Positions 16,427 to 53,332 of a stretch of 64,000 nucleotides of DNA are shown piece by piece. This stretch comes from Mytilus californianus. Its lineage: Eukaryota. Below the pieces are notes generated by a model. It had not been told where the DNA came from, did not search any database, and saw only the letters and a list, made by a program, of their open reading frames with translations. Position 1 is the first letter of the stretch, and every line of letters starts with the position of its first letter. The DNA lies in assembly GCF_021869535.1 (NCBI RefSeq), contig NW_026262692.1, positions 1,736,001-1,800,000 of the forward strand. The letters run 5' to 3'. A program made the position numbers and the translations under genes.

Positions 16427-16602
16427 TTATTCGTCAATATCTGATAATGTTGGTTCGAAATCGGATACCTGGGACGCTAAGTCATTTTGTGTTAAGAAAG
16501 TATCAACTGTAGAACCGGTGCTAAGGTGTTGTTGGCTAGCATAAACTACACGCCGGTGTAATGAACGTGGATGGACGCAGGTTTCTTCAACAATAGGTCC
16601 AT
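16427..16602 (-). CDS. SHFL: SHFL-A coding exon 7 (terminal)
   Basis: tag|[15 protein letters not shown]...[14 protein letters not shown]...SDIDE TAA, 176 nt. Confidence 0.9.
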
Positions 16603-19600
16603 CTAAAATTAGGAATTAAAATACGTATCAATTGAAAATGAAGTAGAGACCAAACTGAGAATAAACAGCTTTGAAATCAGACTTGATTCATAAAACAAAT
16701 TTGTTAAACTAAAACAACATTAAAGTAGTCATATTTACATTATTAAAAATGCGTATCAAGTGGTGTATCGGTGGGTCATTATTTAGTTTATAACAGTAAA
16801 CGAACGACTTGATATGGATGTATAAGTGGTTGAACTAGTTTCGCTCTGAATTCATTTCAACTGACAATTTACTATTTCTTTCATCGAACATGAATCTTAT
16901 TAAGAAAACGGACATTGCTATAATACATATTTGCGTTATCGGTTATTAATCATTTTTAATAAAAGGGTTGATCGGGATATAGAATTCTTGTCACCTGGAC
17001 TTCTCCAATCTATATGTTAATTTAGGGTTAAAGAACGTATTCGTTTGGGTATGCGGGGTGTGGTAATCATGGCCATGTCCGGTTAGAATGGGGATGTTAA
17101 ATCTGTAGCCTCGTGTTAAGGGAAAACGAACTATTCTCTCTCTTTCTTTCTCGTTCATTTTAATAATATCTTGCAACAACTCTTTTATTGATTAATAGGT
17201 TACTTATGAGTTTGAATGTCTCTTTGATAAATTTCGCCTCGCTATTATCAAGTACAAGACAAACATTAATCATCGTATCTAAAATACTTTATTTCTAGAT
17301 TGCACTCTCTTAATTATATGTCAATCCATACCGCAGAGACTGCCTACCGAATGGTTAAATGGTTATGCATGAATAGTTACGTTAAGCAAAGAACAATCAA
17401 TCAGTTGTTTTACTAATCACAGGACATGTAACGACGACAAAAATGTTATACCTTCACCTATTGATTACTTTGTTAAAAACATGGTAGTGCTGTATTTAAA
17501 GAGTAATGTAAACAATTGTTTATTGATGGAAATTAGTTTATTAATTACAGAATGCATCTCCGGAAACAGTTGACACTGATATTTACATTTAGTTTTGTCA
17601 CACAAGTTGTTAATCAGGCCTTTAATCCCTTTAATCAGGCTTTGAGAACGCTAAAACACAGTAAATATTAGATATTTCTATCAGAACATTTGATTTTTTT
17701 AACGTATTCAAATTTCCAGAATGTCTGTCTGATAATACCTCATAAAGGTTATTCAATCAACCAACTAGTGTCATGCGCACTGAAATAATAATCATACGTC
17801 TCTATTACATGCGGCAGATATCAATCGTTACAACTAGTGTCATGCGCACTGAAATGAATATCATGATAAATAAGAAGATGTGGTATGAGTGCCATGAGAC
17901 AACTCTCCATCCATGTCACAATGTATTAAAAGTTAAGTCTATAATATCTAGTGAAGATATCAATCGTAGCAACTAAAAAGGGTTTCTTAAGTAACTTATG
18001 ACGTCAATGCACTTCATTTGGGCCGCTGTAATGATATTGTTGGCAATCAACAAACCTGCACGATTGAAGCAGTTCCGACAGAGACATGAATGCACATTTC
18101 TGGATCTTCTTCCTTCTAACCTCCGTCTTGGCAGAATTGAGTTCGGCGAACATACCGTGCTACATCTGTAACAAGGACTGGAAGCGACTCCCATTTGTCC
18201 AAATCCTCTGTAATAGTTTATAACTGAATATATTTATAAGTTTCTCCTATGCTCTAAAGTATTGTTCGTTACATACATTCATAACAACTTTTCCCCTGTC
18301 TGTTCTATTAAGCTCGGAATTTATATTTTACAATATCATTCAAAAGAATAAATCATAAATACACAGGAAAATACATATTCGAAGCAAGTTGTATATTTAG
18401 ATAAGATATTCGAAGCTATACTTTATTCAAAAAAGATATTCGACGCATTAAGACTGCAGCAAAATGTTGTTGGTCATATCTTAATGCACTAAATTTCACG
18501 TCAAAAGTCTGACAATTCTAAAAACTGAGCACACACACTTGTCTCTTATACATATACATAGAAATAAAGGCAACAGTAGTATGCCGCTGTTAAATAGTCA
18601 CAAATTGATTAAGCAAAAACAAACTAAAATCGAGGAAAACACATCAGCTATAAGAGAAAAACAACGGAACAACAGAAACACTGAACTGCAACAAAAACAA
18701 ACTAAACCATTAACCTGAAAAGGTATGTGGAGTATTTTTTCTCAGACACCATAGTGCCTGTGAAATTAAGATAACATAAAATATATGCAATGTAAAACAT
18801 AACAATGGCACAGAAACGGATATAAAACAGGGAAGAAATGTCAATGATAACTATACAAGCATAATTTTACAATTGGAGACGCAAATCCTTTCGGTGCATG
18901 AAACAGACGGACGCCGAAGGGATATAATCTATATCACACCTTTTGACAGGTAATGAAATTAGCTATATATATTTCGAGACTCCCTATTAAAGTATGATAC
19001 GTTACAATGGAACGAAGAGTTCAGGGATAAAGTGACTGAAGATTTAATATATTAAGAACATAAGTTGGAAGAACTATACCAAAGTATTACAGAAAATGAC
19101 AATTCTATTAATAACACTGTGAATAAAATAAATGTATTTTGACTGATATTTTTCAAAAACAATACACACAAAGAAGTAGAACAAACGATACTTTGTGATA
19201 ATTACACGGAAAAAATCAGAACTTTAAAAAAGACAAACTATGGATAACGATCAATTGTAAGATACTGTATAAGAACTACTAGCATGCCTTAATGAAGTTT
19301 AACAGTAATCACTCCGAGGAGAATAGACTGAAACTGAACTTAGATAAAATAGAATAGGAATGGACTAAATAGTTAACAAACATAGTATTGAAAGCATGCC
19401 AGTATGACTACCTTTTATATTTTAAATTGTGGGTTAATTGATTATAAAAATTGCGTTTTAAAATGTTATGCATGCTAAGTTATGGATCAAATTAGTTAAA
19501 TGTGGTATGCATGAACCAGTAATTCAATGTTGTCGATTGTTGCTATATATCATATTTGTGTTCATTCATTGTTTTGTACATAATTCAGGCAGTTAGTATT

Positions 19601-22600: not shown

Positions 22601-25600
22601 AACTCTCCATCCAAGTCACAATTTATAAAAGTAAACCATTATAGGTCACAGTACGGCCTTCAACACGGAGCATTGGCTCACACCGAACAGCAAGCTATAA
22701 ATGGCCCCAAAAATTACTAGTGTAAAACATCATGGATTGATGAGTTCTAGACTAATTTCTTTTGAAATTCGTACTGTTCTACTAGTAAATATTTTCTATT
22801 GTAGTAATGAAGTATGAAGAATACATTTAATTGTACAATTGTTATAAAATAGTATTAATCAAAGATAATATATATATATTAAACACTATCACTTGCTGTA
22901 CATGACAAAATATTAACAAACGTATTCTCGAATATTGACAATGACATTTTCTTCCTATCAGAGAACAGATCAGCTATAACACCAAAACTGTTATAATAGA
23001 TTAGCATCGATAGGGTCAAAGGTAACGAATTCCAAACTATAATCAAATGCGTTGAAAAAAGCAAGCATATGTGCAGTTCTTTTCAATATTTCCGTTTTTG
23101 AGTAAACCGTTTGATTTTGATAAAGTAAGAAAAGCAACTCTACGAAAGGTGAATAAATAGGCTGTTACATTTGACTGTGAAATATATCTGCTTTGCTTTT
23201 TGAATTATGCTTAGTTGATATACAATATACTTCTACATGTTGTATATATCTGAAATTTATTAACACTTTGTTATTCGTCTTGTTGAATACTATACATACC
23301 TGAAGACATTTCCACAAAGTTGACAATGAAATTCCGCTCTTCCCCATTCGTATTCTGTCGGTACTGCTTCGTATCGTATGTAACATCGCACACACCTCGA
23401 TACCTGTTTAAGTATTGATACCTGCATTATTTGTTTATTTTGTAGTCTAGTATAACATGTTTTGTTCATAACAAGAGTTGTTTGTTATTTTGTTTGTTTT
23501 AATTTTTGTATGTGTTATATAAGTTAAACCTGATATACAGGTCACCCCTATTAAACGATTAAACTAGTAAAACTGGAGAAGCTCGAACAAATAGAAGGGG
23601 AATCAGCTAACACTTGCCTGTTCACAGAATACCACTCTAAACGCAAACAACAATAAAATACGATGTTCTGTTTCTTTCAGAAGTCAAACGAGATTGTTCA
23701 ATATTTGTCACTACTTGAAGTCAAACATAACACGGCCGTTAAATAATGACAATATACTCTCAGAGCATATTAAGTAACGTCCTTTATTTTTCTAAAACCT
23801 CGAATGAAATAAAACTTTACCAGCTTGCGGTTAGGAACTTTTCTCCACCAGACATTGTCACACGTAATGCATGCAAACTGTCTCTCTTGTTTTGGAATAG
23901 TTCCTTGTCGTATTAAGTCTTTCCATATTTGATTATTTTTTATAACTTGCCACTGCAATAAAATATTAATATATTTAAGAAAAACTGTTGTATTTCAATA
24001 ACATAAAGCTTGTTTAAAAAACTATAAGAAACTTTTTCCGTTATTAGACTGTCATTTATTAGTATATATGATGTTTTTTAAAATTGTGTCTTACATGTTT
24101 ACTGTATGGCTTCAAACTTTGTCAATTTCGTGCAATCTCCAAAAAATGCCAAAACTAGTCCTTTTTGATTTATGACAGATTAGCATAATTTTTTAGATAT
24201 GAGTCAAAATCTGTCAAAAAAGAGAAAATAGCCTTAGTTCATATATCATTCACCATATTTTTAATCGAAATGTCACTTTATATAATAATATAAAACTTTC
24301 TAAAATATAATTTTTGTTCTCATTAATTGAAATTCAAAAAAGAATTATCATAACACTTTCCATTAACACATATAATTAAATACTTTCAAATATATATTCA
24401 GCTAAACGTACCGTTTGGTTTTCTGTCCCAATAACATCTCTGACTGTCTCAGGCTCCTCTGAAATACAAGTCTTATGACAGGAGAATATTCAAAACATTA
24501 CGCATAAGAAAAACGTTACTGCAACAAGAAATAAAAATGTAATAATGAAATTGTTTTTTAAACAAACATTTTGTTCATAAAATTGTTTGATGATTCGATT
24601 GGGCAGTAGATATAGGGTAGTTAAACACGATTTCCTCTTTCGATCAGGTGCTAAGCTCTCATTACGTTAGCACTACCAAACATGGCATCATGTGTTAGGA
24701 AAAAATAATAATGTATCGACTATCATCACCTTTTAGAGCTTTACCTCATCAGCTTATGTTACTGACTTGTTGACTTGAATAACCATGCAATACTTGTTCA
24801 ATGATATATAGCTAGCAATAAATGAGAAATGTCAGGAGATGTGACAAGATTGCCATTTAGACAACTACTCATCAGTTACCAAATAACGTGGATGTTTTCA
24901 ATTATCGTTCACTGTCCAAAATTCAACGACGAGCTAGACCCATACCGTATAGTCAGTTATGTATAAAAGGCCCCGGCATGACGAAATTTGAAGCAACACA
25001 AACGAGAAACCAACGGCCTGATTTCTGCTTAAAGAATAAACGATAAAAATAAAATAGCATACAGCAACCAACGAAACACACTTAGTAACATGTACCAGTT
25101 CCTGTCTTTCGAAGGTACAAAAAGCATGTTGTGCGGTCAAACATATTTGTGAGCGTTCACCAACATCTCCGAATCACCTCTCTCACTCATGTGTGCGTTT
25201 TCCTTTGTATGTTGTAAAATTGACAGTTAAAAAAAAAGACGAATTTATATTTCAAGTAACAGTAGATTGCTGATTCTGTACTATTTTATGATTAAACATG
25301 TCTAATGCAATACAATATTACTTTACATGAATTAGTAATTTTGATTAACAGACAACAACTGTAACATGTGTAAGGCATTCAAGAGTTTAAAGTCTATTTC
25401 TCAATGAAATTTAACATTCATGACTGCACGCGCGTGCTCCACATGACAAACTTACAACAATGCATTGGAAAATAAACGAATGGTTTTATTTGGAATTATA
25501 ATCTCACGGTTATAGCAGAAAATAAAAATATTTTTATATGAATTCAATGTTTCTCGATTAGTGTTGGAAAAACGGTGATCGTGTGCATATTATAAGTGGA

Positions 25601-28455
25601 AGCGCTCCATACGTAATTCGTTCAACGGTTTAAAACCAATGAAATTATTAAAAAAAACTCATGTAAGTCTTAGATATTAATTGTAATATAAAAAGACTGA
25701 CAGATTAGTATTTACCATCAAAAACAAAATTAGCAGCTGCCTGGCAGTCTCCATGGTGATGATTAATTAGTGAATGTGCTTCTTCAAACGTAAATCGTCC
25801 TCTGAACAGCTCCTGCAACCTTTTTATCTATATAAACATGATTACGTGAACTGTTAGTATTTTGCTGAATTCTCAAACACAATGCTCAATTTTGCGGTAC
25901 AGAAGAGTACTCGAAAATGTTAACTTTCAAATATTTGAAGGTCGCACAATTGGTAAAATCATCGATATTATAAAAAAAAGATAAATAGAGTCGACGAAAA
26001 GAATACATGAATACATTTATGCAAGATAGCCGAACGACGCAAGCCATTTAACGAACCTATATTAAATATACGCTCCTTAACAAATGATGAGTGTCTAAAC
26101 AATATGTCAACCGATAATCTAGAAAGTGGATAAACTTAAACTATTAAAGTAAAATATTATGAGGGGAAATTCTCCCATGGTTATCAAAATTACGTATATC
26201 CACAGATATACGCGAATGTCAACTGTATAACATTTAGAAATCCAAAAGATTTAAACGTCAATGGTCCCTCTTTAGTTGCATATTGGGTTGATATGCAATA
26301 TATTAGCCGCGAACTTTACTTTATAGAATATCTGGTTGTACGTAAAACTTTCTAGTGTCAATAGAAACGTGCTATATCGTATTCAAAACCTCGGCCCTTT
26401 GTTAATTTTTTTTTCAAGTAAAATACAAAAATGCTTTTAAGTTCATATCTCTCAGACATTTGGCTATAGGTCTCGCATCGAATTTTCAGTTCAAATTATT
26501 GCGATGAGTATAGGGTTCAAAATCAAAACTCTTAAATTTCCATCAAAATGTGTTTGCACGATAACCGGTTTTTAGTTTGAAGACTCAAGTGTGGTGAATG
26601 ATCATCATAACCTGGTCTTTCGGTCATAAAACTTTACTCAATAGTCGGAGTGCAAATTTGTGTCAAAAACCCAAAATTTTATATTTTGGTAAGTTGACTT
26701 TAACATGTTTAAGTTAGAGTGCGATAATCGTACTCGAAAGTTTTATTACCGTTAGTCGTAGAATTGATTCGTTTCGCTTCCCTATAAAACACTCATATGA
26801 TCATTTAAATCCGGACTGTGTTGTCATTTAACTATATAACACTCAGATGATTTATGGACAGAAATCAACAACCCGCGTTCCTTTATCTGTCAATACGAGG
26901 TGTAATCATTAATATTAAAGTTATGAGGTAGCATACGTAACTAAATGAAGTAGATTTTATTGAGAGTCAATAAAATGATAATGTGTTCAAGGGTTTAAAG
27001 AAGTTTCCAAAGAAACGTATGCTTCTTCTTACAGGGACATATTTTGTACATACTACAAAAGGTGTGTACAATTTATGTGGGTTTCTATATTGTATTTGCG
27101 ATGGAAAAATTATTAAGGCAGAAACCATCCAATGCCAGTTTTGCAAGAGGTAGACGTACATGAAACGTTACCTTTAGTCAAATATAATAAAATGTATTGC
27201 ATTGTTTTGTAAAACTTACGAACAAAAATATTTAAATCATATTAGTATCAACGCACCGGCTTCTTGGGTACGGGACAAATGACAAGTATTAAGTATTCAC
27301 TAACATTTGCCAGTGTTAAAGATTGATAACATGTACTGCCTAAAGTTGTTGCCAGCACATGTTGCCTATGTCTCACCAGAAAAATTTTTTTTCTATCAAA
27401 ATAGAATTACTAAAATGTAAGGGCACAAAATAGATCACATTTCTATTCAAAACAATTAGATTGTTTACAAAATGCACAAATATTAATTAATAGAACACTT
27501 TAAATACAAAAGGGATCACATATCTTCTAAAACATTTTGCTTGGACGGATAAAATATATATACTGCCATTGCATCGAAAGTGATACGATATTTCTCTACT
27601 CGAGACATTTAATTCGTTAACCTTAATCGTGAGGCTTGACGATTGTTTTAATATTTAAATTTGAAGGGTCGAAAGCGGAGAAATATGGCTTTGTACGAGA
27701 TTCGGTAGCGGAATCTGTTTCCGTAAAGTTTTTCAGACGATACGTAGGCATAAGTTTTCTTCCTCTCTCAATCATCTGGAAAAATGTGTATTTTGCAATA
27801 TGACGGCAATAATAAAGTCATAATTTAATTTTGACCAATGAAGAACTATGATCAAACGAACCCTACGTTGAATACAAATAAAATACTCAATGGTCAGTGA
27901 AAGTATTCAACGCCTAAAATTATAGTTACTTGTCTTTTATGTTGAAACATTTTATCAAATATCTGTAAATTTATTCGTCAGTAGTTGATCGGTGTTCAGA
28001 TCTTATAAATCGATTAAAAAGATACAAATATAGGTAACAAAAAATACTGGGGGATCGAATGAACTGAAAAGGCGGATCAAGACTTGTACATGTGTGTCGA
28101 CAGGGTAAGAGTCTTCTGCTATCCGTACATCACCTGACGTGCGAATCATATAATATCTATGCACTTTATGTACAATCCGATAGCACATTGATCTTTCTTA
28201 CAGTAACATACATGTACATGTAATATGAGACAGGTGTTACCTGTGAAAGAAAGGTAGTCTGTATTAGTAGCACTGTAGACTAATATTTATCTTTTTTTTT
28301 TATTTAGAATGCATAAACACGTGATATTCAAATATATATTTTATCTACTCTCCGATTCGAGGCTAAAAAAATATTTATAAATACTTATAAACACCATGAA
28401 CGAAACGTTTACTACATATACAAATAGACAATACCTCAAGTTCGCTGTCCTCCAT
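16427..28455 (-). CDS. SHFL: Shiftless (SHFL/C19orf66/RyDEN) homolog, paralogue A; 7 coding exons, 247 aa
   Basis: Exons (minus strand): 28455-28435, 25827-25716, 24458-24412, 23952-23821, 23403-23300, 18207-18056, 16602-16427. All junctions are GT-AG with compatible phases; total 744 nt. Translation: [247 protein letters not shown]. This is collinear with the human SHFL motifs as I recall them ([84 protein letters not shown]). AATAAA at 16393-16388. Confidence 0.93.
18056..18207 (-). CDS. SHFL: SHFL-A coding exon 6
   Basis: cag|[16 protein letters not shown]...[13 protein letters not shown]|gtttgt, 152 nt. Confidence 0.92.
19797..20491. mobile_element. Non-autonomous DNA transposon with TTAA TSD (Kolobok-like), in SHFL-A intron 5
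   Basis: TTAA|AGGGGCACTAGCT ... AGCTAGTGCCCCT|TTAA: perfect 13-bp TIRs starting with AG. Confidence 0.7.
23300..23403 (-). CDS. SHFL: SHFL-A coding exon 5
   Basis: cag|[36 protein letters not shown]|gtatgt, 104 nt. Confidence 0.92.
23821..23952 (-). CDS. SHFL: SHFL-A coding exon 4
   Basis: cag|WQVIK...[21 protein letters not shown]|gtaaag, 132 nt; first CxxC of the zinc ribbon. Confidence 0.92.
24412..24458 (-). CDS. SHFL: SHFL-A coding exon 3
   Basis: cag|(E)[15 protein letters not shown]|gtacgt, 47 nt; bridges phase 1 to phase 0. Confidence 0.85.
25716..25827 (-). CDS. SHFL: SHFL-A coding exon 2
   Basis: tag|[12 protein letters not shown]...ANFVFD G|gtaaat, 112 nt. Confidence 0.88.
28435..28455 (-). 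CDS. SHFL: SHFL-A coding exon 1 (MEDSELE)
   Basis: ATG GAG GAC AGC GAA CTT GAG|gtattg; paralogous to 53312-53332; phase 0 fits exon 2. Confidence 0.75.
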
Positions 28456-30973
28456 TATATGGACTATAAAATCATATCTGTTGAGATAAAACTATTTCCT
28501 GCTTTGTGTTAACATATCAGTTCAATACTTTTCTGCAGTTTATCATCGATTAAAATATCATTAAATGTTTTCATACAAAACACATTTAATTATTGTTTAA
28601 GAATCAATTCAACTAAACAGACATGATGACATTAGGTAATCTCGGGTAATTTTTTTGCATTTTGTTCTTATTTACAAATTATTGTTTAATAACTTATCAA
28701 TCAGCTTACTTATGCTAGTATTAACTATCAGTTAACAATCACCGTCTCAATTTACATGTTCTTATAGTCTGTATTATACCTTTTCAACAACTGTCCACAC
28801 CTACATGTACAGTTTACAACGACACCGACAGGTCAAAGATCGTAAAATGTAAGAGGTCGTCTCAAAAATAGTAATTATCGTGTATGAATATCGGCTTGAA
28901 AAAAGGTTCGTCCGTATGTCTGTAATACTTATTACAATGATATTTTCTTGTTTTAGTTGTATATGAATTTTAACTAAAACTCCGTTGTATTGTTTAACTG
29001 AGTATTACAAAAAGTTCGAAGGGTCATAATTATTTTATTTCATTTTTTTAGACAACGTGCTTCTTCGAGGAAATAAAGTAACAAATATACTGAACTCCAA
29101 GGAAAATTCAAAATGGAAAATCCTTTATCAAATGCACAATCAAAAGCTCATACACATCTAACGACTTGAAAACAACTGTCATATTCCTGACTTGTTGCAG
29201 GCATTTTCTTATGTAGAAAATGGTGGATTAAACCTGTTTTTATTACTAGCTAATCTACTCAATTGTATGACAGTCTTATTTAATTCCATTATATTGACAA
29301 CAATATGTGAGCAAAACAAACAGATGCGGGATTTTTTTTATTAGGTGTTATTGGCTTTGAACTAGCTGTCAGTAACTGCGAGTACTCTCAGATTTGTATT
29401 CAGTGTCTTTTTTTTTTGTGGGGATGTATAAGTACCCGTCCACGTCCTCTCTATGTTTTTGTAAGATGTATTTTATTTGTATCCATCTAAAGAGTAAAGC
29501 CTTTTTTAACTGATTTTTATAGTTTCTTCTTATGTTGTACTGATACACCACTGTCACAGGTTCAGGGGAGGGTTGGCGCCCTTTAAACGAGTTTGCCCCC
29601 TCCACATTCAGTATGGGTGCCTATCCCTAGTCACGAGCATGTAATTCAGTTGTTGTCGTTTGTTGCTGTATAACGTATTTGTTTTTCGTTCATTATTTTG
29701 TACATAAATTAGACCATTAGTTTTCTCGTTTGAATTGTTTTACATTTGTCATTTCGGGGTCTTTTATACCTGACTATGCGGTATGGACTTTGCTCATTTT
29801 TGAAGACCGTACAGTGACCTATAGTTGGTAATTTCTGTGTCATTTTGGTCTCTTGTGGAGAGATATATATACATGATAGTTAAAAATGTCAAAAAAGTAG
29901 GAACAGCAGTCATCATTGTGTTATAATCTTAATCACTATAAAAACAAACAACTAAGTCAACAAAGAAAAACAAAATGGCATGTAGAAAGTCTAAAGTCAA
30001 AGCACGACAGTTAAAGGAGTGAAAAATGAAAGAGGTCGTTTCAAAAAACAGGAATTATCGTATCTGTATACTGACTGTTTGCCCGTATATCTGTTATACT
30101 TATTGCAACGACAATTTCTCGTTTTGGTTGTATATCAAGTTTAACTAAATTTCACTTCCATTGTCCAGAAATCCACCCTTCCTATACCTCTAGCATATGT
30201 GTAACTAACAAACACAGAGCAATACGCACAGTAAAACTCAGTTCAAAAGAAGTTCGAGTCCGATGCTAGAATAGTTAATAGTTCGACTAATGAGTTTCAA
30301 TGTCCCTTTGCTATCCCTAGCCTCTCTTTAACAGAAGAAATTAACTTCAATAAATAAAATGACAATGATCAAAATAAATTTACAAAGGTTCAAAGTTCTG
30401 CAGTTAGTTAATTGATAATTATGACCACACCAAAGACATTAATTGCAACATAGAAATGATGATACCCTCTTTTCAAAAGGCAGTCCAAGTTTCTCCAATC
30501 CGCGAGGGCAATTATTACCGGACCAACCTATTGTATTCATTGGCATAATCAGGGCATCTACAAATTTGTTATACACGAAAAAAAAACATTTTGACAGTCT
30601 GTATAAACATGCATTGCAGATGCGGAAGATGTATACCATGCTGGCCTTCTTGAACATATACTGTCTGATTTAATATCATAGACTTGATTGCACGGTTTTG
30701 TCGGAATGTCCAAACAATTAAATTATCTGCAACCGTCATTCTTATATTTGATGTTAAAAGTTTGTACCATGACTTGTATTGTGTTACACTATGGAACTCA
30801 TCAAAAATGTGAAGCACTCTCCCAAAGAATGTACACATATCGAGTTCGAACAATTCATATACAAGGTTGTCTTTGTCAAATACTATCAACTTCAAAAACA
30901 TTTTATTTGTGTATTTGTTAGATTTATTTGCAAGTTTGTCTGATTCTTTTAGTCAGTTGTGTTGTTTGTCTGT

Positions 30974-37315: not shown

Positions 37316-37929
37316 GAATACCTGTGATAAGAAATCAACAATGTCTGTATTATCGGCAATATGATTTAAAGTATTGTACTTGTAATATTTGTTTAAGTAA
37401 ATTGACACAAATTATAACATTTAAAAATGTTAGTTTCTCTGGCTTCATTTTTATTCGTGGAATACAAATTAAAAAAAAAAAACACAAAATCAAATATCCA
37501 CGAACATGCAAGTTTTCCTTAATCCACGAAAGTTGGTACCCACGAACATAAATGAATTCACAGTAGTAATATAATATCGTTTCTATTGGGTTTGCAATAT
37601 ATATGAGATATTCAATATTCAGAAAAACTAATCATTTACACATTTGCCCTGTAGCCTTACCAGTGTAGCTTACGTAGCAATATATTTGTCATTATGAAAT
37701 AAAGACAACAGTACAGAAACAAGTTTACCCATCTTCAATTCGTAAAATAAAATTCGGTCAAAAGATAAAAATCAAAGTAACAAATAGTAGAAAACGCTTA
37801 GCCTGTCGACACCAATTTTGAATATCGTGCGATACTCTCAGTTTTTGTTTTTACATTGATTTGTATCTGTTGAATATACTTATGGGATTAAAAATCGGTA
37901 AACCATAGTTACATGTGATAAACCGTGCT

Positions 37930-44073: not shown

Positions 44074-44249
44074 TTATTCATCAATATCTGATAACGTTGG
44101 TTCGAAATCAGAAGCCTGGGAAGCCAAGTCATCTTGGGTTAAGAAAGTATCAACTGTTGATCCGGTGCTAATGTGTTGTTGGCTAGCATAAACTACCCGC
44201 CTGTCCAATGATCGTGGATGGACACAGGTTGCTTCAACAAAAGGTCCAT
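44074..44249 (-). CDS. SHFL: SHFL-B coding exon 7 (terminal)
   Basis: cag|AT GPFVEATCVHPRS...[14 protein letters not shown]...SDIDE TAA, 176 nt. Confidence 0.9.
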
Positions 44250-47200
44250 CTGAAAAGTATATTTTAAAAATATACTCACAAAAAGAAAAAAAGGTCGATA
44301 ACGAGTTGGCAATCCTGCATGTTGGACTGAAAATTTATTAAAATAAAATTACATTTGTATTGAACATTTTAAATGGACAAATCACACAAATCACACAAAT
44401 GCTACAATTTTGAGAGTTTACGAGTTAAATGGGTTGTCATATATAAAAGCCTTAGATCAAAACATTTTATTGTATTTACGCATCCCAAGATTTTAATTGT
44501 TGAGGTTTGAGCGTTCTGGATGACAGTGATCTACGAAAAGCGCTTCGAACGCATGACACTTATAAAGTGTTAATTTCATACGGATTTTATATTTTGACAC
44601 TGTTTATTTATGTTTGCTTAGCGTATGCATATATTTGTTTTATTATGTATGTGTTAATGTAAGAACGAACAAAGTGTAGGAGCTAAGTCTGCTGGTGGAG
44701 TTTTAGTCAACACGCTTATCAACATCCCAGTATATGAAGTCAGTACTTCGCTGCGAATATTGTCTATTGAATTTTGCACTCATAAAATTTTAAAAATCAT
44801 GTTTAATTAAGGAATGCATCTACCTCATGCATAGCTCCGATTCCTTGGTTTGGCTTAATTTTAAGGTCATTTTTGGTTTAATCAGCTTTTCATCCCATGT
44901 ATTAGATTTGAGACTTTCATATATGTTGGCCTCAATCATAACTAAAGTGAAAATAATTATCGAAATGCGAATCTGTTACACTGAAATAAGCACTGATCAT
45001 TGGATGACAAGCTGTGCTTTGGTTCAAAGAGATGGCATGAAATATGTCTTAGTAGATGAACGATGATAATGGGAAAAAACAATCCTTCTGGTTTTTTCGA
45101 GTGTTATGAAAAAAGTCTTTGTCAACAATAAATTGTGTGTAAAACGTTGCAATTTTGCCTTTGCTTCGTCATTTCAAAAAACATGCAGAAGATCCGAAAC
45201 AGACATTAAAAGACAAGAAAAACTACAGTTCACTAAGGACTCAGCAACACGAACCCCACCAAAACCCCGGGGTGATCTCATATTCTCTGCATGCCCTCAA
45301 TTAGTCAAGATTAAAGCAAGTAAGGCGTTCAGTACAAATCACAGGAAGACCTGAAATTTAGGTAGCCAATACGTACAAGACCTGTACATGCTGTGCAAGA
45401 ATACTGTTACACAACTGTTCTTGGCTACAAGATGATTAAGCATTCACGATCATGATACAAATTCTACTAGTGTCTGTCGTAAGCCCAGACCTTAAAATCC
45501 AGTTGCTGTCTTACATATTTGATTTTTGTTTGTTTATGTTATATAGCTGTTGGTTTGGTTTATTTCATATTGTTTCACGTTTTGTCATACCGGGATTTCC
45601 GAAGCTTGTTATACGAGAAGGTTTTCATCATTGTTGAAGGATGTGAAGTGACCTGTAATTATTCAGAATTTGTTCTGTCTTCTGGTTTTTATGGATAATT
45701 GCCTCATCGGCAATCATTCCATATTTTCTTATTTTCATTGTATGCATGTCTGAAGTGTATTTTTAGTTGCAGAATGTTTAGTTGTTTGCATATTCGTGGT
45801 AGTCACGGTTGAACTCATACCCTACGTGTCATTTCTAGTAGCTACTCCTTTTTTGCGGGAATGGATATAATTTTATCTTACCTCCTTTACATTTCTAGGA
45901 ATATGATTGGTTAAAAGCGTCCGCGTGGAGACAGTGTATATTCCATATTAGGTCAGTAGGGAGGCTGGGCTTATTTCATACACGGTTAGTAGTAGTGTTA
46001 CATCCCTTTATAAAAACAAAACGGTACTGAGAAAAAATCTTAAAGGTTTCAACAGACGAAGAAATTGATGATGAAGATTGAAATAAATTTATAAAACACT
46101 TTTAAACTTAACAAGTTGTTATTGTTGGCATCTGTTTTTGTAGGATCAATGGAAGTAGCTTCTTAATGCTAACGGTATTGAAGACTTGCTCATTTTGATA
46201 GGTCACTTGTTTAAATTTCACACGTTAAGATAGTCGGTAAGATACATTCGTTACATAGTGTGCTAGTGACGTAATACGGTATATATGGGGTCAGTAAATT
46301 CCATATAGAATTTACTGACCCCATATATACCGTATTAGGTCACTAGCACACTATGTAACTAATAATGTTTGGTAAAGTTTTGTTCTAGAGAGATACCAAT
46401 ATGATATTGGTGTTACATGTATTAAACAAACCTGCACGATTAAAACAATTATGGCAGAGACATGAATGGACATTTCTTGATCTTCTCCCTTCAATTCTCC
46501 GTCCTGGCAGGATAGCAATTGGTGAACAAGCAGTTTCGCATCTGTAACACAAATTTGAAGCGACTCCCATTTGTCCGAATCCTCTGAAATAATGAATGAA
46601 ACTTTGTATGTTCAGCTTCTGTATGCCCTTGTCCATTATACATTGTGAACTTTTATTGAGTTTCTTCCTTTAAATTTCTTTAATCTCAGAAATTTACATT
46701 TCACAATAACACAAACATATTAAAAAAATATATCAGCATTAAACTTGATTATGGAAACTTACCCCACACTATGTTTTAAATCAACCAGTATATGAGCATC
46801 ATGACTAATTATGAATTATTTTATTAAGATAAGCAACTGTACCAGAGGTAAATGAATTAAATCTAACAATGTTAAGAAATCGACAATTTTTACTTTGGTG
46901 TTTTGCTAGTAAATATTCAATACATTTTAAAAATCTGTTAAGTTTAATTGGAAATTACTATTCGTTTTGCTGAATATTATACATACATGAAGATATTTCC
47001 ACAAAATTGGCATTGATATTTGGCTCTTCCCCATTCATGTTGTCTCGGTACAGCTTCATATCGTATACGACACAGCACACATCTTGAAACCTGAAACATA
47101 TCCAAACCGTTTTAGAATGACAAAGAAATGTCGAAAAATTAAAGTCGTTTCAAAAGTTGTGCAAAAAAACGATATAAATCAATAATGTTATTCTGATTTT

Positions 47201-50200
47201 GCTGTGTTCTTAGAGTTGGAAAATGTGTATTGACTGCGCGTTACATGGCTATACGTAGACATGACGATTTATCAGAAAAAATTACTTTGGCCATTACTGA
47301 GCCTCGGCAGGTCAGAAATACTAAATAGTTGGAGTCATGTTTATTTTTGTTCTTTTGGATAATCTTTGAATATTAAATACATATAGATATTCTCTGTGTT
47401 GCGAGTAGGTTCAATATATTTTCCGATTCTAAATAGCTAAATTAATTAGAGTTTTAACATGCAAAGAAGCATGTTGATGTTTCAAATTTACCTATTCAAA
47501 ATGGATAAATATTGTTACTAACGAAATGCAAAATGTATCTTTTCTTAAAAGCGATATACAAAATGTATTTTTTTAAAAAGAGATATGTATTGATAACTCC
47601 GTAAAATAAACCAACGGAACTGAAACACAAACTCGAGTTGTAACTATTCCTTACACAACTACAAGAATCATGTATCTGTCAAAAAGTGGTCTTGAAAGAA
47701 ATGATATAAAAGGATTCGGTTTTTATCACTCCTGTGAGGAAAGAACATCTGGTTAAATGATATATTACAACATATCTTTTCTGTCATGTATATTTATATA
47801 ACTAAGGAAATATGATCAAACTTCGCACTGAATTAGCTATGTCCTGTCATCAATATTTCAATAAAAAACTAACACTCATGCAATCACTCTTTTTTGAGTT
47901 CAGTGATAGCCAGTTGTTAGCAATATTTCTTACCCTAATCATAATACTTTTATTTTCCAGAGAACGACGAAATTCCAGCTATTAAACCGGGTCAGTCAGT
48001 TTTGCAGGACTCACCTATCAATTTATTGTTGGTTCAGTAAACAAATTTTAGTCTGAAACGGTCATTTTGATCTGAATAGCTCTTAAAGCACCGAACAATA
48101 GATTAAAATGATTACGTCATTTTTAGTTTTTCAGTAACTTTTCAGACTTCTCCACTACTGATTTGACGAATCGCTTGCAATCAGTATAGATCACTTCAGA
48201 CTGACCAGTAGTTGTTATTTACCTGTACAGATCACCAATATACTGAATTTTCCAAAACGCTTCTGAACAGTTGTGAATTGACTGAATGCAAATCATCTGA
48301 ACAGTACTGAATTTACCACCTCGGTCAATTAATCTGAAAATTGACTGAAAAATTGAACAAGACTAAATAATTAATTATTCAGATGATGTCAAGATCAAAA
48401 TGACCGTTTCAGACCAAAATTCGTTTAGAAGCCTTTGTTCTCGTCCTGGATATTTTTTAACCTTTTGCCATTAGACAAATAGTGAAGTTCAGCAAACAGT
48501 AATTAATCATGAACTGGCTTTTCAATATTAAATATTACTAGGCAACAATCTGAGAGATAACATATTGCCCAAATCGGACAGTCTGAGAAAAAATAAATCG
48601 CTCAAATCGGACAGTCTCAAAGATAACATATCGCCCAGATCGGACAGATTATTATTAATCCGAGTCAAATAGTACTGCTAAATGTCCTGGTTTATGGAGA
48701 TACATGTAAACTCATCGCAGATACCAGAATCAACATGTTGTACACAAGACGCACGTTTCGTCTACAGAAGACTCATCGTTAACTCTGTAATAAAACAATG
48801 TTAAAAAAAAGCCAAATAAAGTACGAATTTAAGAAGCATTAAGGACCCGAAATTCCGAAACGGGTTGACATTTGCAGCAAATGCAATCTATGCCTGGAGT
48901 AAAAAAACATCCTTAGTAGTTCGAAATATTCCAATTTTTTTGTAGACAGTTAATGTATGATGATTACCGTATTAATTCAGCATTTACTATTTCTATAGTT
49001 TTTGGCTAAATCCGGTCAGATACCTCCTCCTGCACTCAGGAGGAGCACGAGATTAACGAAATAGTTATATTCACTGCATAAATGCACACATAATACGACA
49101 GTTTGATAATTCCTTTGTAAATATGATTATACACCGAGCTTTGAATAAATAAACCCTTGCTTAAAGCAAGTCATTTGAATCAAATAGAAACTTACCAGCT
49201 TCCGACTTGGAACTTTCCTCCACCAAACATTATCACACGGACCGCATGCAAACAGTCTCTCCTGTTTTTCGATAATTCCTTGTCGCACTAGATCGTTCCA
49301 ATTGTGATTATTTGCAATAACTTGCCACTAAAAAAAAGATTTTTTAAGAAAAGCATTCTTATTTCTGTAGAAAAACAGCGTAAATAACTCTAGGAGAAAG
49401 TTATGTTTTAAAACATTGACAAAGATGCAATTATGTTTGCATAAAGTGGAATAAAACAACAAGGACGCTACGTTAAACCAAATTTTCTATCAAATCACTG
49501 AAAATCATGGCGAACAAAAAACAATGACGAAACGACAAGTAAAAGTCAACACAGAAAACTCAAAAAAAAATGAGCATTTGGAACCTATTCAAATTCTGAG
49601 AATGAAATAAGTTATTCAGGAAGGTTATGCAGGCCCTGCCAATCTATACACGCATTGTGATACTAATTCAAAGTGAAATTCCGATGATAATTTGCATTCG
49701 GTAATTTCACAATCAAGGAAAAAAGGACAGGATAGTGGCTAAAATAAGTGGAACATATAAATGAAAAATTACATCACTGACATTTCATTACGTCAACCCG
49801 TCAACCAAATGATGATGACGTCCGTAAAACTTTCGATCGGATGACTTCAACTTTAATTCTTTGTAAGCAGCCGCCCTCTACGAACGAATACATGATAGGA
49901 AACGTCTACTCGCAATATAAAAAAAAATGTGTTATATTGAGCACCACGAAGTTGTTTCCTTAAGATTCATTTAGAATCGGACATCCGGTTGTTCCATGTG
50001 ATTAGTTTGTACAGACACACTTTCAATACACCATGAACTACAATTGTACCTCTAGAATAAGTTAACAATTTATAACACGTAGCTTTATTGTTAATAGAAA
50101 ATGGTATAATACCAACAGAAAAAAACACATATAAATAGGGGAGAGAATTCCAGTTTATAAGTTATATAACCAACTTTAGATTATTTTCAAGTTTTTTATT

Positions 50201-53200
50201 TAATAGTCCAGTCCTAATAGATCTCGGTTTGTTTGAATGACCATGTTTTGGATTTCTGTGTTTGACTGTTTTGTCATAGAGGTTGTTTACTGATACATAA
50301 GTTAATGTTAACATGTCGTATTATAATAATAAAGCACTTTTCGCCTTACTTAACATATAGTCTAATTGTGTGGTTTTAAACATCCGTTGCTAACTTTATT
50401 TAACTTATAATTTGTGAGGAAAATAAGGGTAGGCATATATAATATTATTCAGGTGAAATTAAAAACAGAAAATATTGATTCGAAGTCTACTTAATAAAAA
50501 GGTTGAATAAAAGTAATTGTTGTGTTCAAAATTTGCGTCAAAGTGTATGAAGGTTAGTTGATTTTTGTATTGTGTTGCTATAATTTTCTACTTTACTGGA
50601 AGGTAGATTTTTTTATGAAAATTTGTTGAGTCGATGGACAAATTGAAAACAGACACGAACTTATATATACTTCATAAGATTGCCAACATATAATTAGTTA
50701 ATTTTACCGATTCATTTTCGGTGCCAATAACATCTCTGACTCTTTGAGGTTCTTCTGCAAAGCAAATCTTTATATTAATTTCATTATCAAAGAGCATGAT
50801 ATAATATAATGCACATTTATCAACTTTTACTGCAACAACACAATACAGAGAGAAAATAACATTTCATTATCAAATCACAGTTTAACTTTGCCAACTATCC
50901 CCCAGTATCAACAACTGTATTAGCCTTACCAAACGGTTTATTACAACACTGTAATTTATCTAAAATATGATGAACTATTTGCCACTCGACATAAAATAAT
51001 CAATAATCTTCCAATCGCCAATCAATACGTTTGATTTCGTCCAATAGTTTGGTTTAGGCGACGATATTTTACGTCATGTGTGCTATTGTTGGGCATACAA
51101 TTTACGTACATACATTGAGCAAGGCGATGAATATTATAATGGGGAACAATTGCCTTATGAATGCTTGGATATATGTGTTAAATGATGAAATTAATATATT
51201 TCTTAAGGTAGAATAAAACTTTATCTCTTATATTTTCTGAAATATTAAAACAGGAATATTTTCAAAATCCATGTACCTCTGACTTTATTTCTGTACCACC
51301 CTAGTCATGGTTTCTATAATACATGCTTTAGATTTTGTTCTCATTAAAAAAAGTTATTTACCATCGATGACAAAATTAGCAGCTGCCAGGCAATCTCCAT
51401 GGTGATGGCTGATAAGTGACTGTGCTTCCTCAAACGTAAATCGTCCTTTGAACAGCTCTTGCAGTCTTTTTATCTATTCAATGTAGAAAATGAATTGTTT
51501 ATTTGTCACAGAATGAACAACTAAAAAATTAAATCTTATAGTGGTAATGATGCAAACTTGTTTTAGGGATGTTCGCTACTGTTTTTCCAAATAACAAGCT
51601 TTTTAAAAGATTGTTATTAATTGATAGTTTATAAATAATAAAACTTAAAAAGTAGATAAAAATGACAGATCCGTGTCCTTGTTTTTGAGATATAATCAAT
51701 TGAAAATTTGGCGGGAAATGATTCTCTCTAGACTCTTCATACATTTAACATTAGCATCGTTTTTCATTCAAAAACTATGAAAAAAAAACAAGGATTTTAT
51801 AAGATTTTAAAATATTGCTTTTTAAATTATATGCAATAAAATTATGAAAAGAAAAGTAGGGGTTAGCGGGCAAAATTTTTATTGGTACTACATGGATAAA
51901 ACTAGAGGATTCCGAATATCTGACAAAATGTGGAAAAACATGAGTAGCGAACATCCTTACAAAAGAAAACAAATTGAAACATTCTGTTTCAACCATTTGA
52001 AGATTTTGCTTTGGGTCAATACATTAGAATGAAAATTGGAATGAAACGAGTTGTTTGGAATACATCAATGAGAAAGGAACTAAAAGACTGAAGAAGTCAA
52101 CAAAAGGTCTTAACTAAATTACAATATGTCAATCGAGTCTAGAAAGGGATTATTTAAAAGACTGTCACAGATGTATCGTCAACATCACCATTCCCTGGAG
52201 GAAAAACAAAAGTAATACACTTTTATACTAAAGATAGACATAGCATTATTAATTCGATTAACAAGTCAACGCATGTGTCATGTTTCAGTCAGTTATTACC
52301 TCTTTGAACATTTCATGTATATGCTGCACTACCCGCCTTTAACCATGAGTAATTGATATCTTCAAAATATTGGCGTTTTCCTTATTTCACTTATTGGTGA
52401 TAAACTGGTAGTACCCGTATGTATCATCAGCTCAGTAGTTAGAACCCGTGTACTGATGTGATTTCTATCATTCGTTTCTTAAATTCTCGGATGGTGAATT
52501 TAGAAATTATTAAGAAACAAAGGTACATACTCCCTCAGCTATAGTTGACAGTAGATGGATTTGGCTATTCTTTCCTGGGTTCCGTTTGGTTTTGTTGCTC
52601 CACGCATATTCATAAGCTAATTCGTTCCCAGTTTATTTTCTTTGGGGAAAGGGGGGGGGGGGGGGGGGTGGAGGATTCCTGAATAAGATAAATTCAGAAA
52701 ACGCTTCAGACGCACCAACTTTAAAAGATGCGCAGCTAAAGTCCCAACATTGGATCCTTGATATTTGCACCTCTTGGTGACCTGGACGGCCGCTCCGGCT
52801 TGCCTTTTTTCCGCTGGCGACTCGCTGGCCTGAACATTTTTTTCCCGCTGACAAGCCGGTGATTGATTTAATATCCCTAGAACTAAAAACCATGAGATAT
52901 AAACAAATGACACGGAAGTAATAACACAGTTTAATAAATCTGGTCTTATTGACATTTAAAATAAATATAAATATATAAATTAAACGCTACGTGCGTAACA
53001 ACAAAAACACACAAAGAAAACCAAAAAGGTCAGACGTCAACGTATGGTCATCAGCAATAAACATCATTCCATATCTAATGTCCAACTCTAAATCGTCGCG
53101 AGTCAAGAACAAACAAAACTTTTTTCAGCCGACAGTAAATCGTGGACAGATATTATCACAAAAAAAAACCGACGAAATCTAATCTTCAAAGAATATTAAT

Positions 53201-53332
53201 TTTGCATACTTGGAACTACTAAAATTAAATCACATGACATCAAATTAAGAGATAAAACCACGAAATGTTAACCATTAAACACTTAATGTTTCTACAGAAT
53301 ATTTACTATACCTCAGGCTCGTTGTCCTCCAT
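44074..53332 (-). CDS. SHFL: Shiftless (SHFL/C19orf66/RyDEN) homolog, paralogue B; 7 coding exons, 247 aa
   Basis: Exons (minus strand): 53332-53312, 51473-51362, 50754-50708, 49327-49196, 47090-46987, 46583-46432, 44249-44074. Sizes and phases match paralogue A; all GT-AG. Translation: [253 protein letters not shown] at 44049-44044. Confidence 0.93.
46250..46359. repeat. Near-perfect fold-back (52-bp arms, 6-nt loop, one mismatch) in SHFL-B intron 6; MITE-like
   Basis: GTTACATAGTGTGCTAGTGAC(G/C)TAATACGGTATATATGGGGTCAGTAAATTC-CATATA-reverse complement. Confidence 0.9.
46432..46583 (-). CDS. SHFL: SHFL-B coding exon 6
   Basis: cag|[16 protein letters not shown]...HSCLCHNCFNRA G|gtttgt, 152 nt. 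Confidence 0.92.
46987..47090 (-). CDS. SHFL: SHFL-B coding exon 5
   Basis: cag|VSRCVLCRIRYEAVPRQHEWGRAKYQCQFCGNIF AT|gtatgt, 104 nt. Confidence 0.92.
48044..48421. mobile_element. MITE-like element with ~30-bp inverted ends in SHFL-B intron 4
   Basis: AATTTTAGTCTGAAACGGTCATTTTGATCT (48044-48073) versus AGATCAAAATGACCGTTTCAGACCAAAATT (48392-48421), one mismatch; ACTGA/TCAGT-rich interior. Confidence 0.6.
49196..49327 (-). CDS. SHFL: SHFL-B coding exon 4
   Basis: tag|WQVIANN...[21 protein letters not shown]|gtaagt, 132 nt. Confidence 0.92.
50708..50754 (-). CDS. SHFL: SHFL-B coding exon 3
   Basis: cag|(E)[15 protein letters not shown]|gtaaaa, 47 nt. Confidence 0.85.
51362..51473 (-). CDS. 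SHFL: SHFL-B coding exon 2
   Basis: tag|[12 protein letters not shown]...ANFVID G|gtaaat, 112 nt. Confidence 0.88.
53312..53332 (-). CDS. SHFL: SHFL-B coding exon 1 (MEDNEPE)
   Basis: ATG GAG GAC AAC GAG CCT GAG|gtatag; paralogous to 28435-28455. Confidence 0.75.

What the first reader, a model, noticed from the sequence alone, without database searches (positions are those of the whole stretch)
16427..53332. Two intact tandem Shiftless (SHFL/RyDEN) paralogues in an invertebrate (bivalve-type) genome, invisible in the ORF track
Seen in sequence: two 7-exon minus-strand genes with identical exon lengths and phases, no stops or frameshifts, and 48/247 aa differences. Their introns have diverged widely in size (intron 5 is 5092 vs 403 bp; intron 4 is 417 vs 2105 bp), which implies an old duplication with both coding copies maintained. 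Established knowledge: the motifs match human SHFL, an interferon-stimulated zinc-binding RNA/ribosome-associated protein that inhibits -1 programmed frameshifting and restricts flaviviruses and other viruses; it is single-copy in human and studied almost entirely in vertebrates. Inference: an animal without vertebrate interferon keeps a duplicated anti-recoding defence module, which could act on frameshifting RNA viruses or retroelements of bivalves.
Basis: partly seen in the sequence, partly recalled or inferred. Interest (0 to 1): 0.92.

Follow-up and report, generated by a model that had tools for sequence, protein, structure and literature searches.

The report
Tandem Shiftless genes in California mussel
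The window holds two intact, neighbouring mussel copies of Shiftless, a vertebrate antiviral protein that blocks ribosomal frameshifting; the gene models are right, but public databases already name both genes this way and nobody has tested what they do in an invertebrate.

Summary
There are two minus-strand, 7-exon genes, A at 16427-28455 and B at 44074-53332. They share exon lengths and phases, all introns are GT-AG, each encodes 247 aa, and they differ at 48 residues. Intron 5 is 5092 vs 403 nt and intron 4 is 417 vs 2105 nt.

Homology to SHFL is secure:
- Pfam PF15135 scores E 2e-58 (A) and 1e-53 (B).
- Human SHFL crystal structure 9kbo matches at E 3e-43.
- The AlphaFold model matches only 9kbo.
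- All 12 zinc ligands and the four phospho-loop sites are kept.

Transcript contigs confirm introns 1-5 of A. Splicing of B was not tested.

The duplication is old (dS 0.70) and both copies are constrained (dN/dS 0.15; 0.21 and 0.26 within each lineage). The pair is conserved in M. coruscus, M. edulis and M. galloprovincialis.

It is not new. The two proteins are identical to RefSeq XP_052059161.1 and XP_052059159.1, [quoted passage not shown] [Mytilus californianus]. Homologues are annotated in oysters, a scallop and gastropods, and one is listed in an octopus transcriptome.

The genome has at least three further family loci. The N-terminus looks UBA-like. Antiviral or anti-frameshift function remains pure inference. 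Earlier notes of this scan concern only this same window.

The parts
28435..28455 (-). Gene A (XP_052059161.1) exon 1, start codon at 28455-28453
   Evidence: Model. The junction 25827/28435 is seen in a transcript contig of run X7, which runs on to 28474, so the 5'UTR is at least 19 nt.
25716..25827 (-). Gene A exon 2, UBA-like N-terminal helices
   Evidence: Model. Junctions on both sides are seen in transcript contigs. The exon hits the Ede1 UBA domain 2g3q at E 0.014 and Pfam UBA_4 at E 0.037, below the cutoff.
24412..24458 (-). Gene A exon 3
   Evidence: Model. Junctions 23952/24412 and 24458/25716 are in transcript contigs.
23821..23952 (-). Gene A exon 4, end of the helical bundle and first knuckle of zinc finger 1
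   Evidence: Matches 9kbo_A residues 101-127 at E 5.8e-8. Junctions are confirmed.
23300..23403 (-). Gene A exon 5, second knuckle of ZF1 and first knuckle of ZF2
   Evidence: Matches 9kbo_A residues 129-160 at E 6.7e-7. The loose end at 23300 continues into exon 6 sequence.
18056..18207 (-). Gene A exon 6, second knuckle of ZF2, the segment equivalent to human 164-199, and most of ZF3
   Evidence: Matches 9kbo_A residues 164-213 at E 7e-6. Pfam PF15135 E 5e-14 on the enclosing ORF.
16427..16602 (-). Gene A exon 7, last ZF3 ligand, phospho-loop, short acidic tail, stop codon
   Evidence: Matches 9kbo_A residues 221-265 at E 0.016. Pfam PF15135 E 2.3e-6.
53312..53332 (-). Gene B (XP_052059159.1) exon 1, start codon
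   Evidence: Model. The translation equals P0020.
51362..51473 (-). Gene B exon 2, UBA-like N-terminal helices
   Evidence: It is 87.8% identical in nucleotides to A exon 2.
50708..50754 (-). Gene B exon 3
49196..49327 (-). Gene B exon 4
   Evidence: Pfam PF15135 E 1.5e-7 on the enclosing ORF. Model.
46987..47090 (-). Gene B exon 5
   Evidence: Pfam PF15135 E 1.2e-8 on the enclosing ORF. Model.
46432..46583 (-). Gene B exon 6
   Evidence: Pfam PF15135 E 1.3e-16 on the enclosing ORF. This exon was the query that recovered the family.
44074..44249 (-). Gene B exon 7 with stop codon
   Evidence: Pfam PF15135 E 9.7e-7. Model.
28456..28700 (-). Upstream block of A that is conserved with the block upstream of B (53333-53559) and with the M. 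edulis B orthologue; likely 5'UTR or core promoter
   Evidence: blastn 67.7% over 266 nt. Three-way alignment. It contains no ISRE, GAS or NF-kB consensus.

Best explanation
These are two functional, tandemly arranged paralogues of the SHFL (Shiftless/RyDEN/C19orf66, Pfam UPF0515) gene of the mussel Mytilus californianus.

Shown here:
- Each encodes a 247-aa protein with the SHFL architecture: an N-terminal helical domain, then two CCCC zinc ribbons, an HCCC zinc loop and the conserved Ser/Thr loop.
- The first three helices of the N-terminal domain look UBA-like.
- The pair arose by a duplication within the mussel lineage, before M. californianus, M. coruscus and the M. edulis complex split.
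- Both copies have since been kept under purifying selection.

Inferred from the human protein:
- Each works as a monomeric zinc-finger protein that binds RNA and the ribosome and lowers the output of structured or slippery mRNAs, including -1 frameshift sites. I put this at about 0.6.
- This serves antiviral or anti-retroelement defence without vertebrate interferon. I put this at about 0.35-0.4.

The two copies differ in the basic patch of zinc finger 1, so they may differ in RNA preference.
For: - Gene models with canonical splice sites and no stops. They are identical to RefSeq XP_052059161.1 and XP_052059159.1.
- Pfam PF15135 scores E 2.4e-58 and 1.3e-53 against a cutoff of 29.8 bits. Human SHFL 9kbo_A matches at E 2.7e-43 over residues 98-265.
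- The AF2 model of A has pLDDT 82. Its only significant Foldseek hits are the chains of 9kbo, at E 9e-19 and TM 0.54-0.59.
- All 12 zinc ligands are present in both copies, and 11 of the 12 are invariant across 18 family members. The positions equivalent to human S249/T250/T253/S256 read S/T/T/T (with residue numbers from PMC12716391).
- Spliced transcript contigs support introns 1-5 of A.
- dS is 0.70 and dN/dS 0.15 between the copies. dN/dS is 0.21 on the A lineage and 0.26 on the B lineage.
- In the tree, A groups with M. coruscus A (94/87) and B groups with the M. edulis/M. galloprovincialis B (99/98). The A+B clade has 100/100 support.
- A-type and B-type proteins lie on the same contig or chromosome in M. 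edulis, M. galloprovincialis and M. coruscus.
Against: - No functional data exist for any invertebrate SHFL in the searched literature.
- Of the three arginines needed for RNA binding in human SHFL (R131, R133, R136), A keeps one and B keeps two.
- The Glu-rich tail of the human protein is absent and the region of its nuclear export signal aligns only weakly. The protein ends in a short acidic tail.
- The 400 nt upstream of either start codon hold no ISRE, GAS or NF-kB-like motif. The transcription start is unknown, so this is a weak negative.
- The one raw-read RNA run gave a single read on gene A, so expression in that sample is low.
- Expression of B was not tested.
Confidence: 0.85

Rival explanations
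1. The genes are real SHFL homologues, but their job is housekeeping rather than immune defence. They would act in ribosome-stress or frameshift surveillance, or in mRNA-granule biology. The antiviral role of the vertebrate gene would then be a later co-option under interferon control.
For: - A published view holds that SHFL belongs to the ribosome stress surveillance machinery and only later acquired immune roles (PMC10747187, abstract seen).
- dN/dS is low (0.15-0.26) with no sign of an arms race in any domain.
- No ISRE, GAS or NF-kB motif lies upstream.
- The family is widespread in molluscs that lack vertebrate interferon.
Against: - The family has been duplicated repeatedly in Mytilus, with at least five loci. 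That is commoner for defence genes than for core translation factors.
- A TRIM-like B-box/propeller gene sits between the two copies.
- None of this is decisive.
Confidence: 0.35
2. Only one copy is functional. The other, most likely B, which has the longer branch, is silent or decaying.
For: - B transcripts were not examined here.
- The B lineage has the longer protein branch, about 0.19 against 0.10.
- RefSeq lists a truncated isoform X2 of 179 aa.
Against: - B has an intact 247-codon frame and six canonical introns.
- dN/dS is 0.26 against the M. edulis orthologue over dS 0.30.
- Intact 247-aa B-type proteins are annotated in M. coruscus and M. edulis, and a shorter B-type isoform in M. galloprovincialis.
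- All zinc ligands are kept.
Confidence: 0.05
3. The apparent duplication is an assembly artefact, that is, two haplotypes or a mis-join laid side by side.
For: Mussel genomes are highly heterozygous (general knowledge).
Against: - dS of 0.70 and 19% protein divergence are far beyond allelic variation.
- The two copies have different intron sizes, and a different gene lies between them.
- Each copy has its own orthologue in other Mytilus assemblies, on the same contig as the other type.
Confidence: 0.01

Closest known systems
Human SHFL / Shiftless / RyDEN / C19orf66 / IRAV (PDB 9kbo; Pfam PF15135 UPF0515)
   Same: - The fold matches over the whole length (Foldseek E 9e-19).
- ZF1 and ZF2 are CCCC zinc ribbons and ZF3 is an HCCC loop, with every ligand in place.
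- The segment equivalent to residues 164-199, required for -1 PRF inhibition in human, is present.
- The four phosphorylated positions of the buried loop are conserved as S/T/T/T.
- The N-terminal motif aligns with human residues 3-36.
   Different: - The mussel proteins are 247 aa against 291 aa.
- They lack an insertion of about 29 residues that the vertebrate helical bundle carries (seen in the Anolis sequence of alignment A1).
- They lack the Glu-rich tail, and the export-signal region aligns only weakly.
- Only 1 (A) or 2 (B) of the RNA-binding arginines R131/R133/R136 are kept.
- The N-terminus still carries a recognisable UBA-like signature.
- The gene is tandemly duplicated and part of a family of at least five genes, whereas it is single-copy in human.
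- There is no interferon system of the vertebrate type upstream.
RefSeq and ENA annotated SHFL homologues of molluscs (Mytilus spp., Ostrea edulis, Saccostrea cucullata, Ylistrum balloti, Gigantopelta aegis, Pomacea canaliculata, Plakobranchus ocellatus; Octopus maya transcript in PMC6522055)
   Same: - A and B are themselves two of these entries (XP_052059161.1, XP_052059159.1).
- A-type and B-type orthologues exist in M. edulis, M. galloprovincialis and M. coruscus, and the 7-exon structure was checked in the M. edulis B and M. coruscus A orthologues.
   Different: Nothing differs in kind. Some public models are wrong:
- M. coruscus CAC5381432.1 fuses the A orthologue to a Mutator transposase that lies in intron 5.
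- The M. galloprovincialis model P0002 reads exon 4 out of frame.
UBA / UBA-like domains (Pfam UBA_4 PF14555; Ede1 UBA 2g3q, FAF1 UBA 3e21)
   Same: - A profile of the molluscan N-termini hits the Ede1 UBA domain at E 1.7e-5 and FAF1 UBA at E 0.026.
- 5 of 18 family members hit Pfam UBA_4, best E 7e-6.
- The model of residues 1-60 is a small helical bundle. Its best Foldseek neighbours are almost all UBA or CUE domains, for example 2g3q at TM 0.77 and rmsd 1.6 A.
   Different: - A itself is below the Pfam cutoff (E 0.04-0.14) and B gives no hit.
- The Foldseek E-values are not significant for so small a domain.
- Ubiquitin binding is untested.
- In human SHFL the signature has eroded, and the region is described only as a distorted helical bundle.

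Membership tests
SHFL / UPF0515 (PF15135) | Whole-protein score above the Pfam gathering cutoff | tested here: met
   A scores 198.1 bits and B 182.6 bits against a cutoff of 29.8.
SHFL / UPF0515 (PF15135) | ZF1 zinc ribbon, four Cys (human C112, C115, C132, C135) | tested here: met
   The ligands are C88, C91, C108 and C111 in both copies. Ligand numbering comes from PMC12716391.
SHFL / UPF0515 (PF15135) | ZF2 zinc ribbon, four Cys (human C155, C158, C174, C177) | tested here: met
   The ligands are C131, C134, C151 and C154, invariant in all 18 aligned members.
SHFL / UPF0515 (PF15135) | ZF3 short zinc-binding loop, HCCC (human H203, C205, C210, C223) | tested here: met
   The ligands are H178, C180, C185 and C198, with the same spacing as in human.
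SHFL / UPF0515 (PF15135) | Buried phospho-loop with S249, T250, T253, S256 | tested here: met
   The equivalent positions are S220, T221, T224 and T227 (Ser to Thr at the last) in both copies. Phosphorylation itself cannot be tested here.
SHFL / UPF0515 (PF15135) | Segment equivalent to human 164-199, which is missing in the inactive short isoform | tested here: met
   Exon 6 aligns to 9kbo residues 164-213 with one 2-residue gap.
SHFL / UPF0515 (PF15135) | Overall fold like the solved human structure | tested here: met
   The AF2 model has pLDDT 82 and pTM 0.68. Against 9kbo chains A, B and C it scores E about 1e-18, probability 1.00, TM 0.52-0.59. The next hit has E 0.15.
SHFL / UPF0515 (PF15135) | Basic residues R131, R133, R136 of ZF1 needed for RNA binding | tested here: inconclusive
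   A has R, V, Y and B has R, V, R at these positions. Neighbouring basic residues (equivalents of K134 and R138) are kept. The paralogues on C99 are more human-like.
SHFL / UPF0515 (PF15135) | C-terminal Glu-rich domain and nuclear export signal (human 261-286) | tested here: not met
   The alignment to 9kbo ends at residue 265. The mussel proteins end in a short acidic tail of about 12 residues without a Glu run. This is a feature of the vertebrate protein, not of the Pfam family.
SHFL / UPF0515 (PF15135) | Inhibits -1 programmed ribosomal frameshifting; binds RNA and ribosomes | not testable with these tools
   This needs reporter and binding assays.
SHFL / UPF0515 (PF15135) | Induced by antiviral signalling | tested here: inconclusive
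   No ISRE, GAS or NF-kB consensus lies in the 400 nt upstream of either ATG. The transcription start is unknown and no challenge data were examined.
UBA-like domain | Sequence match to UBA models | tested here: inconclusive
   The family profile hits 2g3q at E 1.7e-5, and 5 of 18 members hit UBA_4. A alone scores E 0.037-0.14, below the cutoff, and B gives no hit.
UBA-like domain | Compact three-helix bundle that superposes on UBA structures | tested here: inconclusive
   The model of residues 1-60 has pLDDT 84.6. The top neighbours are UBA or CUE domains at rmsd 1.2-2.2 A, but every E-value is 0.9 or higher.
UBA-like domain | Binds ubiquitin or a ubiquitin-like partner | not testable with these tools
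   This needs a binding assay.

The most novel reading that the evidence does not exclude
Mussels run an interferon-independent, multi-gene Shiftless system. At least five SHFL paralogues would have diverged in the RNA-binding surface of zinc finger 1, including the A/B pair kept since before the genus radiated. Each would restrict a different set of frameshift-dependent RNA viruses or retroelements. The UBA-like N-terminus, eroded in vertebrates, would tie the ancestral protein to ubiquitin-dependent ribosome quality control.
Probability: 0.25. Interest if true: 0.6.

Novelty: already known. Interest (0 to 1): 0.33.

Why it matters
All SHFL work I found concerns vertebrates as an interferon-stimulated gene. 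The 2025 structural paper stresses conservation only "from zebrafish to humans".

The mussel genes keep every zinc ligand and the phospho-loop. The core machine therefore probably predates vertebrate interferon. Mussels offer natural variants: a shorter helical domain, no Glu-rich tail, and a changed basic patch. These could be used to ask which parts are needed for frameshift inhibition.

That is a useful comparative handle, not a discovery. The genes are already named in RefSeq and their function is unknown.

Tried and rejected
1. The search for homologous proteins cannot take a spliced protein by reference. I therefore searched the 1.84-billion-protein representative library with exon 6 of B alone. 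The 50-aa query gave only 17 hits, but those led to the full-length database entries.
2. The raw-read RNA run X4 gave only one read on gene A. It says nothing about splicing.
3. A motif scan for ISRE, GAS, NF-kB and TATA in the 400 nt upstream of each ATG found nothing useful.
4. I looked for remains of the Mutator transposase of the M. coruscus intron 5 in the window. There are none, so the 5.1-kb intron 5 of A is not explained by that element.
5. Literature searches combined SHFL, C19orf66, shiftless or RyDEN with oyster, mussel, mollusc, bivalve, hemocyte or invertebrates. They returned no functional study. The only hit was a table entry for Octopus maya.
6. A Foldseek search with the isolated N-terminal domain gave a consistent list of UBA and CUE domains, but no significant E-value.
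7. I did not build full gene models for the two C99 paralogues. Only exon-level matches are reported.
Full report
**What is there**

The window is AT-rich eukaryotic DNA with no N runs. A self-comparison of 16-30 kb against 44-54 kb gave seven collinear conserved blocks of 76-88% identity and one weaker block just upstream of the first. Translating these blocks on the minus strand and placing GT/AG boundaries gave two complete gene models.

- Gene A runs from 28455 down to 16427. Gene B runs from 53332 down to 44074.
- Each has seven exons of 21, 112, 47, 132, 104, 152 and 176 nt, with identical phases.
- All twelve introns are GT..AG. Each CDS is 744 nt with no internal stop.
- The two 247-aa products differ at 48 positions. 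Introns 4 and 5 are 417 and 5092 nt in A, and 2105 and 403 nt in B.

**Transcript evidence**

Contigs of three runs of the same species label (X5-X7) lie on gene A with the introns removed.

- They skip 417 nt (23403/23821 after the stated shift), 459 nt (23952/24412), 1257 nt (24458/25716) and 2607 nt (25827/28435). The ends read CT..AC on the plus strand, which is GT..AG on the minus strand.
- Their loose end at 23300 is the reverse complement of the first 30 bases of exon 6. Intron 5 is therefore spliced as predicted too.
- One contig reaches 28474, so the 5'UTR is at least 19 nt.
- The only raw-read RNA run gave a single read, so expression in that sample is low.
- Intron 6 of A and all of B were not covered.

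**Family membership**

- Single exons already pass the Pfam UPF0515 threshold and hit the human Shiftless crystal structure 9kbo.
- A search of the representative library with exon 6 of B, followed by a word-index search, returned database proteins P0021 and P0020. These are identical to my translations of A and B.
- Their accessions are XP_052059161.1 and XP_052059159.1. Both are named [quoted passage not shown] [Mytilus californianus].
- Full-length scores are PF15135 E 2.4e-58 and 1.3e-53, and 9kbo_A E 2.7e-43.
- An AlphaFold2 model of A built on an 18-member alignment (pLDDT 82, pTM 0.68) has the four chains of 9kbo as its only significant Foldseek neighbours, the best at E 9e-19 and TM 0.54-0.59. 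The next hit is at E 0.15.

**Functional residues**

The comparison uses residue numbers from the 2025 structure paper (PMC12716391) and the 2022 review (PMC9230503).

- All twelve zinc ligands of ZF1, ZF2 and ZF3 are present in both copies, and eleven of them are invariant in the family alignment.
- The four phosphorylated positions of the buried loop read S, T, T, T.
- The segment missing from the inactive human short isoform (164-199) is present.
- Three things differ from human. Of the RNA-binding arginines R131/R133/R136, A keeps one and B keeps two. The Glu-rich tail is absent. The helical domain lacks an insertion of about 29 residues that the vertebrate (Anolis) sequence carries.

**The N-terminus**

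- Exon 2 does not hit human SHFL by itself. It does hit the Ede1 UBA domain.
- A profile of 17 molluscan N-termini hits Ede1 UBA at E 1.7e-5, FAF1 UBA at 0.026, and residues 3-36 of human SHFL at 0.067.
- Five of 18 family members hit Pfam UBA_4.
- A model of residues 1-60 (pLDDT 84.6) has UBA and CUE domains as nearly all of its best structural neighbours, though without significant E-values.

I read this as an ancestral UBA-like module that has eroded in vertebrates. The structure paper does not mention it. It remains a lead, not a result.

**Age and selection**

- Between A and B, dS is 0.70, dN 0.105 and dN/dS 0.15. No domain exceeds 0.28.
- I rebuilt the CDS of the M. edulis B orthologue and it translates exactly to P0019. 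I also rebuilt exons 2-7 of the M. coruscus A orthologue. All junctions are canonical.
- Within lineages, dN/dS is 0.21 for A (dS 0.11) and 0.26 for B (dS 0.30).
- In a maximum-likelihood tree, A groups with M. coruscus A, and B groups with M. edulis/M. galloprovincialis B. The A+B clade has 100/100 support, and its sister is the mussel paralogue on contig C121.
- A-type and B-type proteins lie on the same contig or chromosome in M. edulis, M. galloprovincialis and M. coruscus.
- In M. edulis the B gene is followed by a B-box/propeller gene, as in the window, and preceded by a potassium-channel gene.

The duplication therefore predates the divergence of these species, and both copies have been maintained. 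Intron sizes are a poor clock. Intron 5 of the M. coruscus A gene is 17.9 kb and holds a Mutator-like transposase, which the annotators fused to the gene.

**Family size**

A six-frame Pfam search of the whole 1.65-Gb assembly found exon matches at three places: the window pair, one gene on C121, and two convergent genes on C99. The C121 gene is P0056, XP_052060090.1, 280 aa. All have the UBA-like exon.

**What is known**

- Homologues are named in Ostrea edulis, Saccostrea cucullata, Ylistrum balloti, Gigantopelta aegis, Pomacea canaliculata and Plakobranchus ocellatus.
- An Octopus maya transcript is listed among immune genes (PMC6522055).
- I found no paper that tests any invertebrate SHFL.

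The finding is an accurate re-discovery of annotated genes. The biological idea remains open and testable, but no evidence here goes beyond conservation. I found no ISRE, GAS or NF-kB motif in the 400 nt upstream of either gene.

**Verdict**

- The duplication is old and both copies are constrained.
- Function is inferred only.
- Novelty: already known at the level of annotation.
- Interest is modest. The value lies in comparative dissection of SHFL and in the possible UBA-like origin of its N-terminus.
- Earlier notes of this scan (s1-288009, s1-288022) concern this same window only.

Noticed in passing
window 35609-37408 (-): A TRIM-like gene (B-box, coiled coil, NHL-type beta-propeller) lies between the two SHFL genes. 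It is open for 599 codons apart from one in-frame TAG at 36629-36631. The M. edulis neighbour in the same position is annotated as an intact 546-aa protein.
   Followed up: partly
window 6464-7009 (-) and 58824-59342 (+): Two ORFs with the BTB_2 (potassium-channel tetramerisation) domain flank the SHFL pair, at E 3e-10 and 6e-11. The same neighbours are annotated next to the orthologues in M. coruscus and M. edulis, so synteny of the whole block is conserved.
   Followed up: partly
G000:C121:9257200-9273000 (+); G000:C99:12660350-12673810 (+) and 12679480-12692560 (-): Three further SHFL-family genes lie in the same genome, 35-60% identical to A exon by exon. All have the UBA-like exon. The two on C99 lie tail to tail about 6 kb apart and have a more human-like basic patch in ZF1.
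   Followed up: partly
L020:6991-24867 (M. coruscus, GCA_011752425.2): Intron 5 of the A orthologue is 17.9 kb and holds a Mutator-like transposase. The public model CAC5381432.1 (601 aa) fuses that transposase to SHFL exons 6-7, although exons 2-5 lie intact upstream.
   Followed up: yes
P0002 (M. galloprovincialis 'hypothetical predicted protein', 155 aa): This public gene model reads exon 4 of the B-type gene in the wrong frame and skips exon 5. The SHFL genes of mussels are mis-modelled in some annotations.
   Followed up: partly
window 1-60 aa of both proteins (exons 1-3: 24412-28455 and 50708-53332): The N-terminal helices look like a UBA-like domain and align with residues 3-36 of human SHFL. 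The human region is described only as part of a distorted helical bundle.
   Followed up: partly
window 23854 and 23866 (exon 4 of A), 25792 (exon 2 of A): Transcript contigs of X6 and X7 read G for A at 23854 and 23866, and X7 reads T for A at 25792. X5 matches the window at 23854 and 23866. On the mRNA strand the first two are T>C, so they are not ADAR-type changes. They are most simply allelic differences between individuals.
   Followed up: no
window 19662-19777 and 45620-45738: A 116-nt block is 71% identical between the two loci but out of order. It lies in intron 5 of A and in intron 6 of B. It is probably a dispersed repeat rather than a conserved intron element.
   Followed up: no
window 28456-28700 and 53333-53559 (-): About 250 nt upstream of both start codons are conserved between A, B and the M. 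edulis B orthologue. They include two nearly invariant blocks, despite dS 0.7 in the coding sequence. This is a candidate shared promoter or 5'UTR element of unknown meaning.
   Followed up: partly
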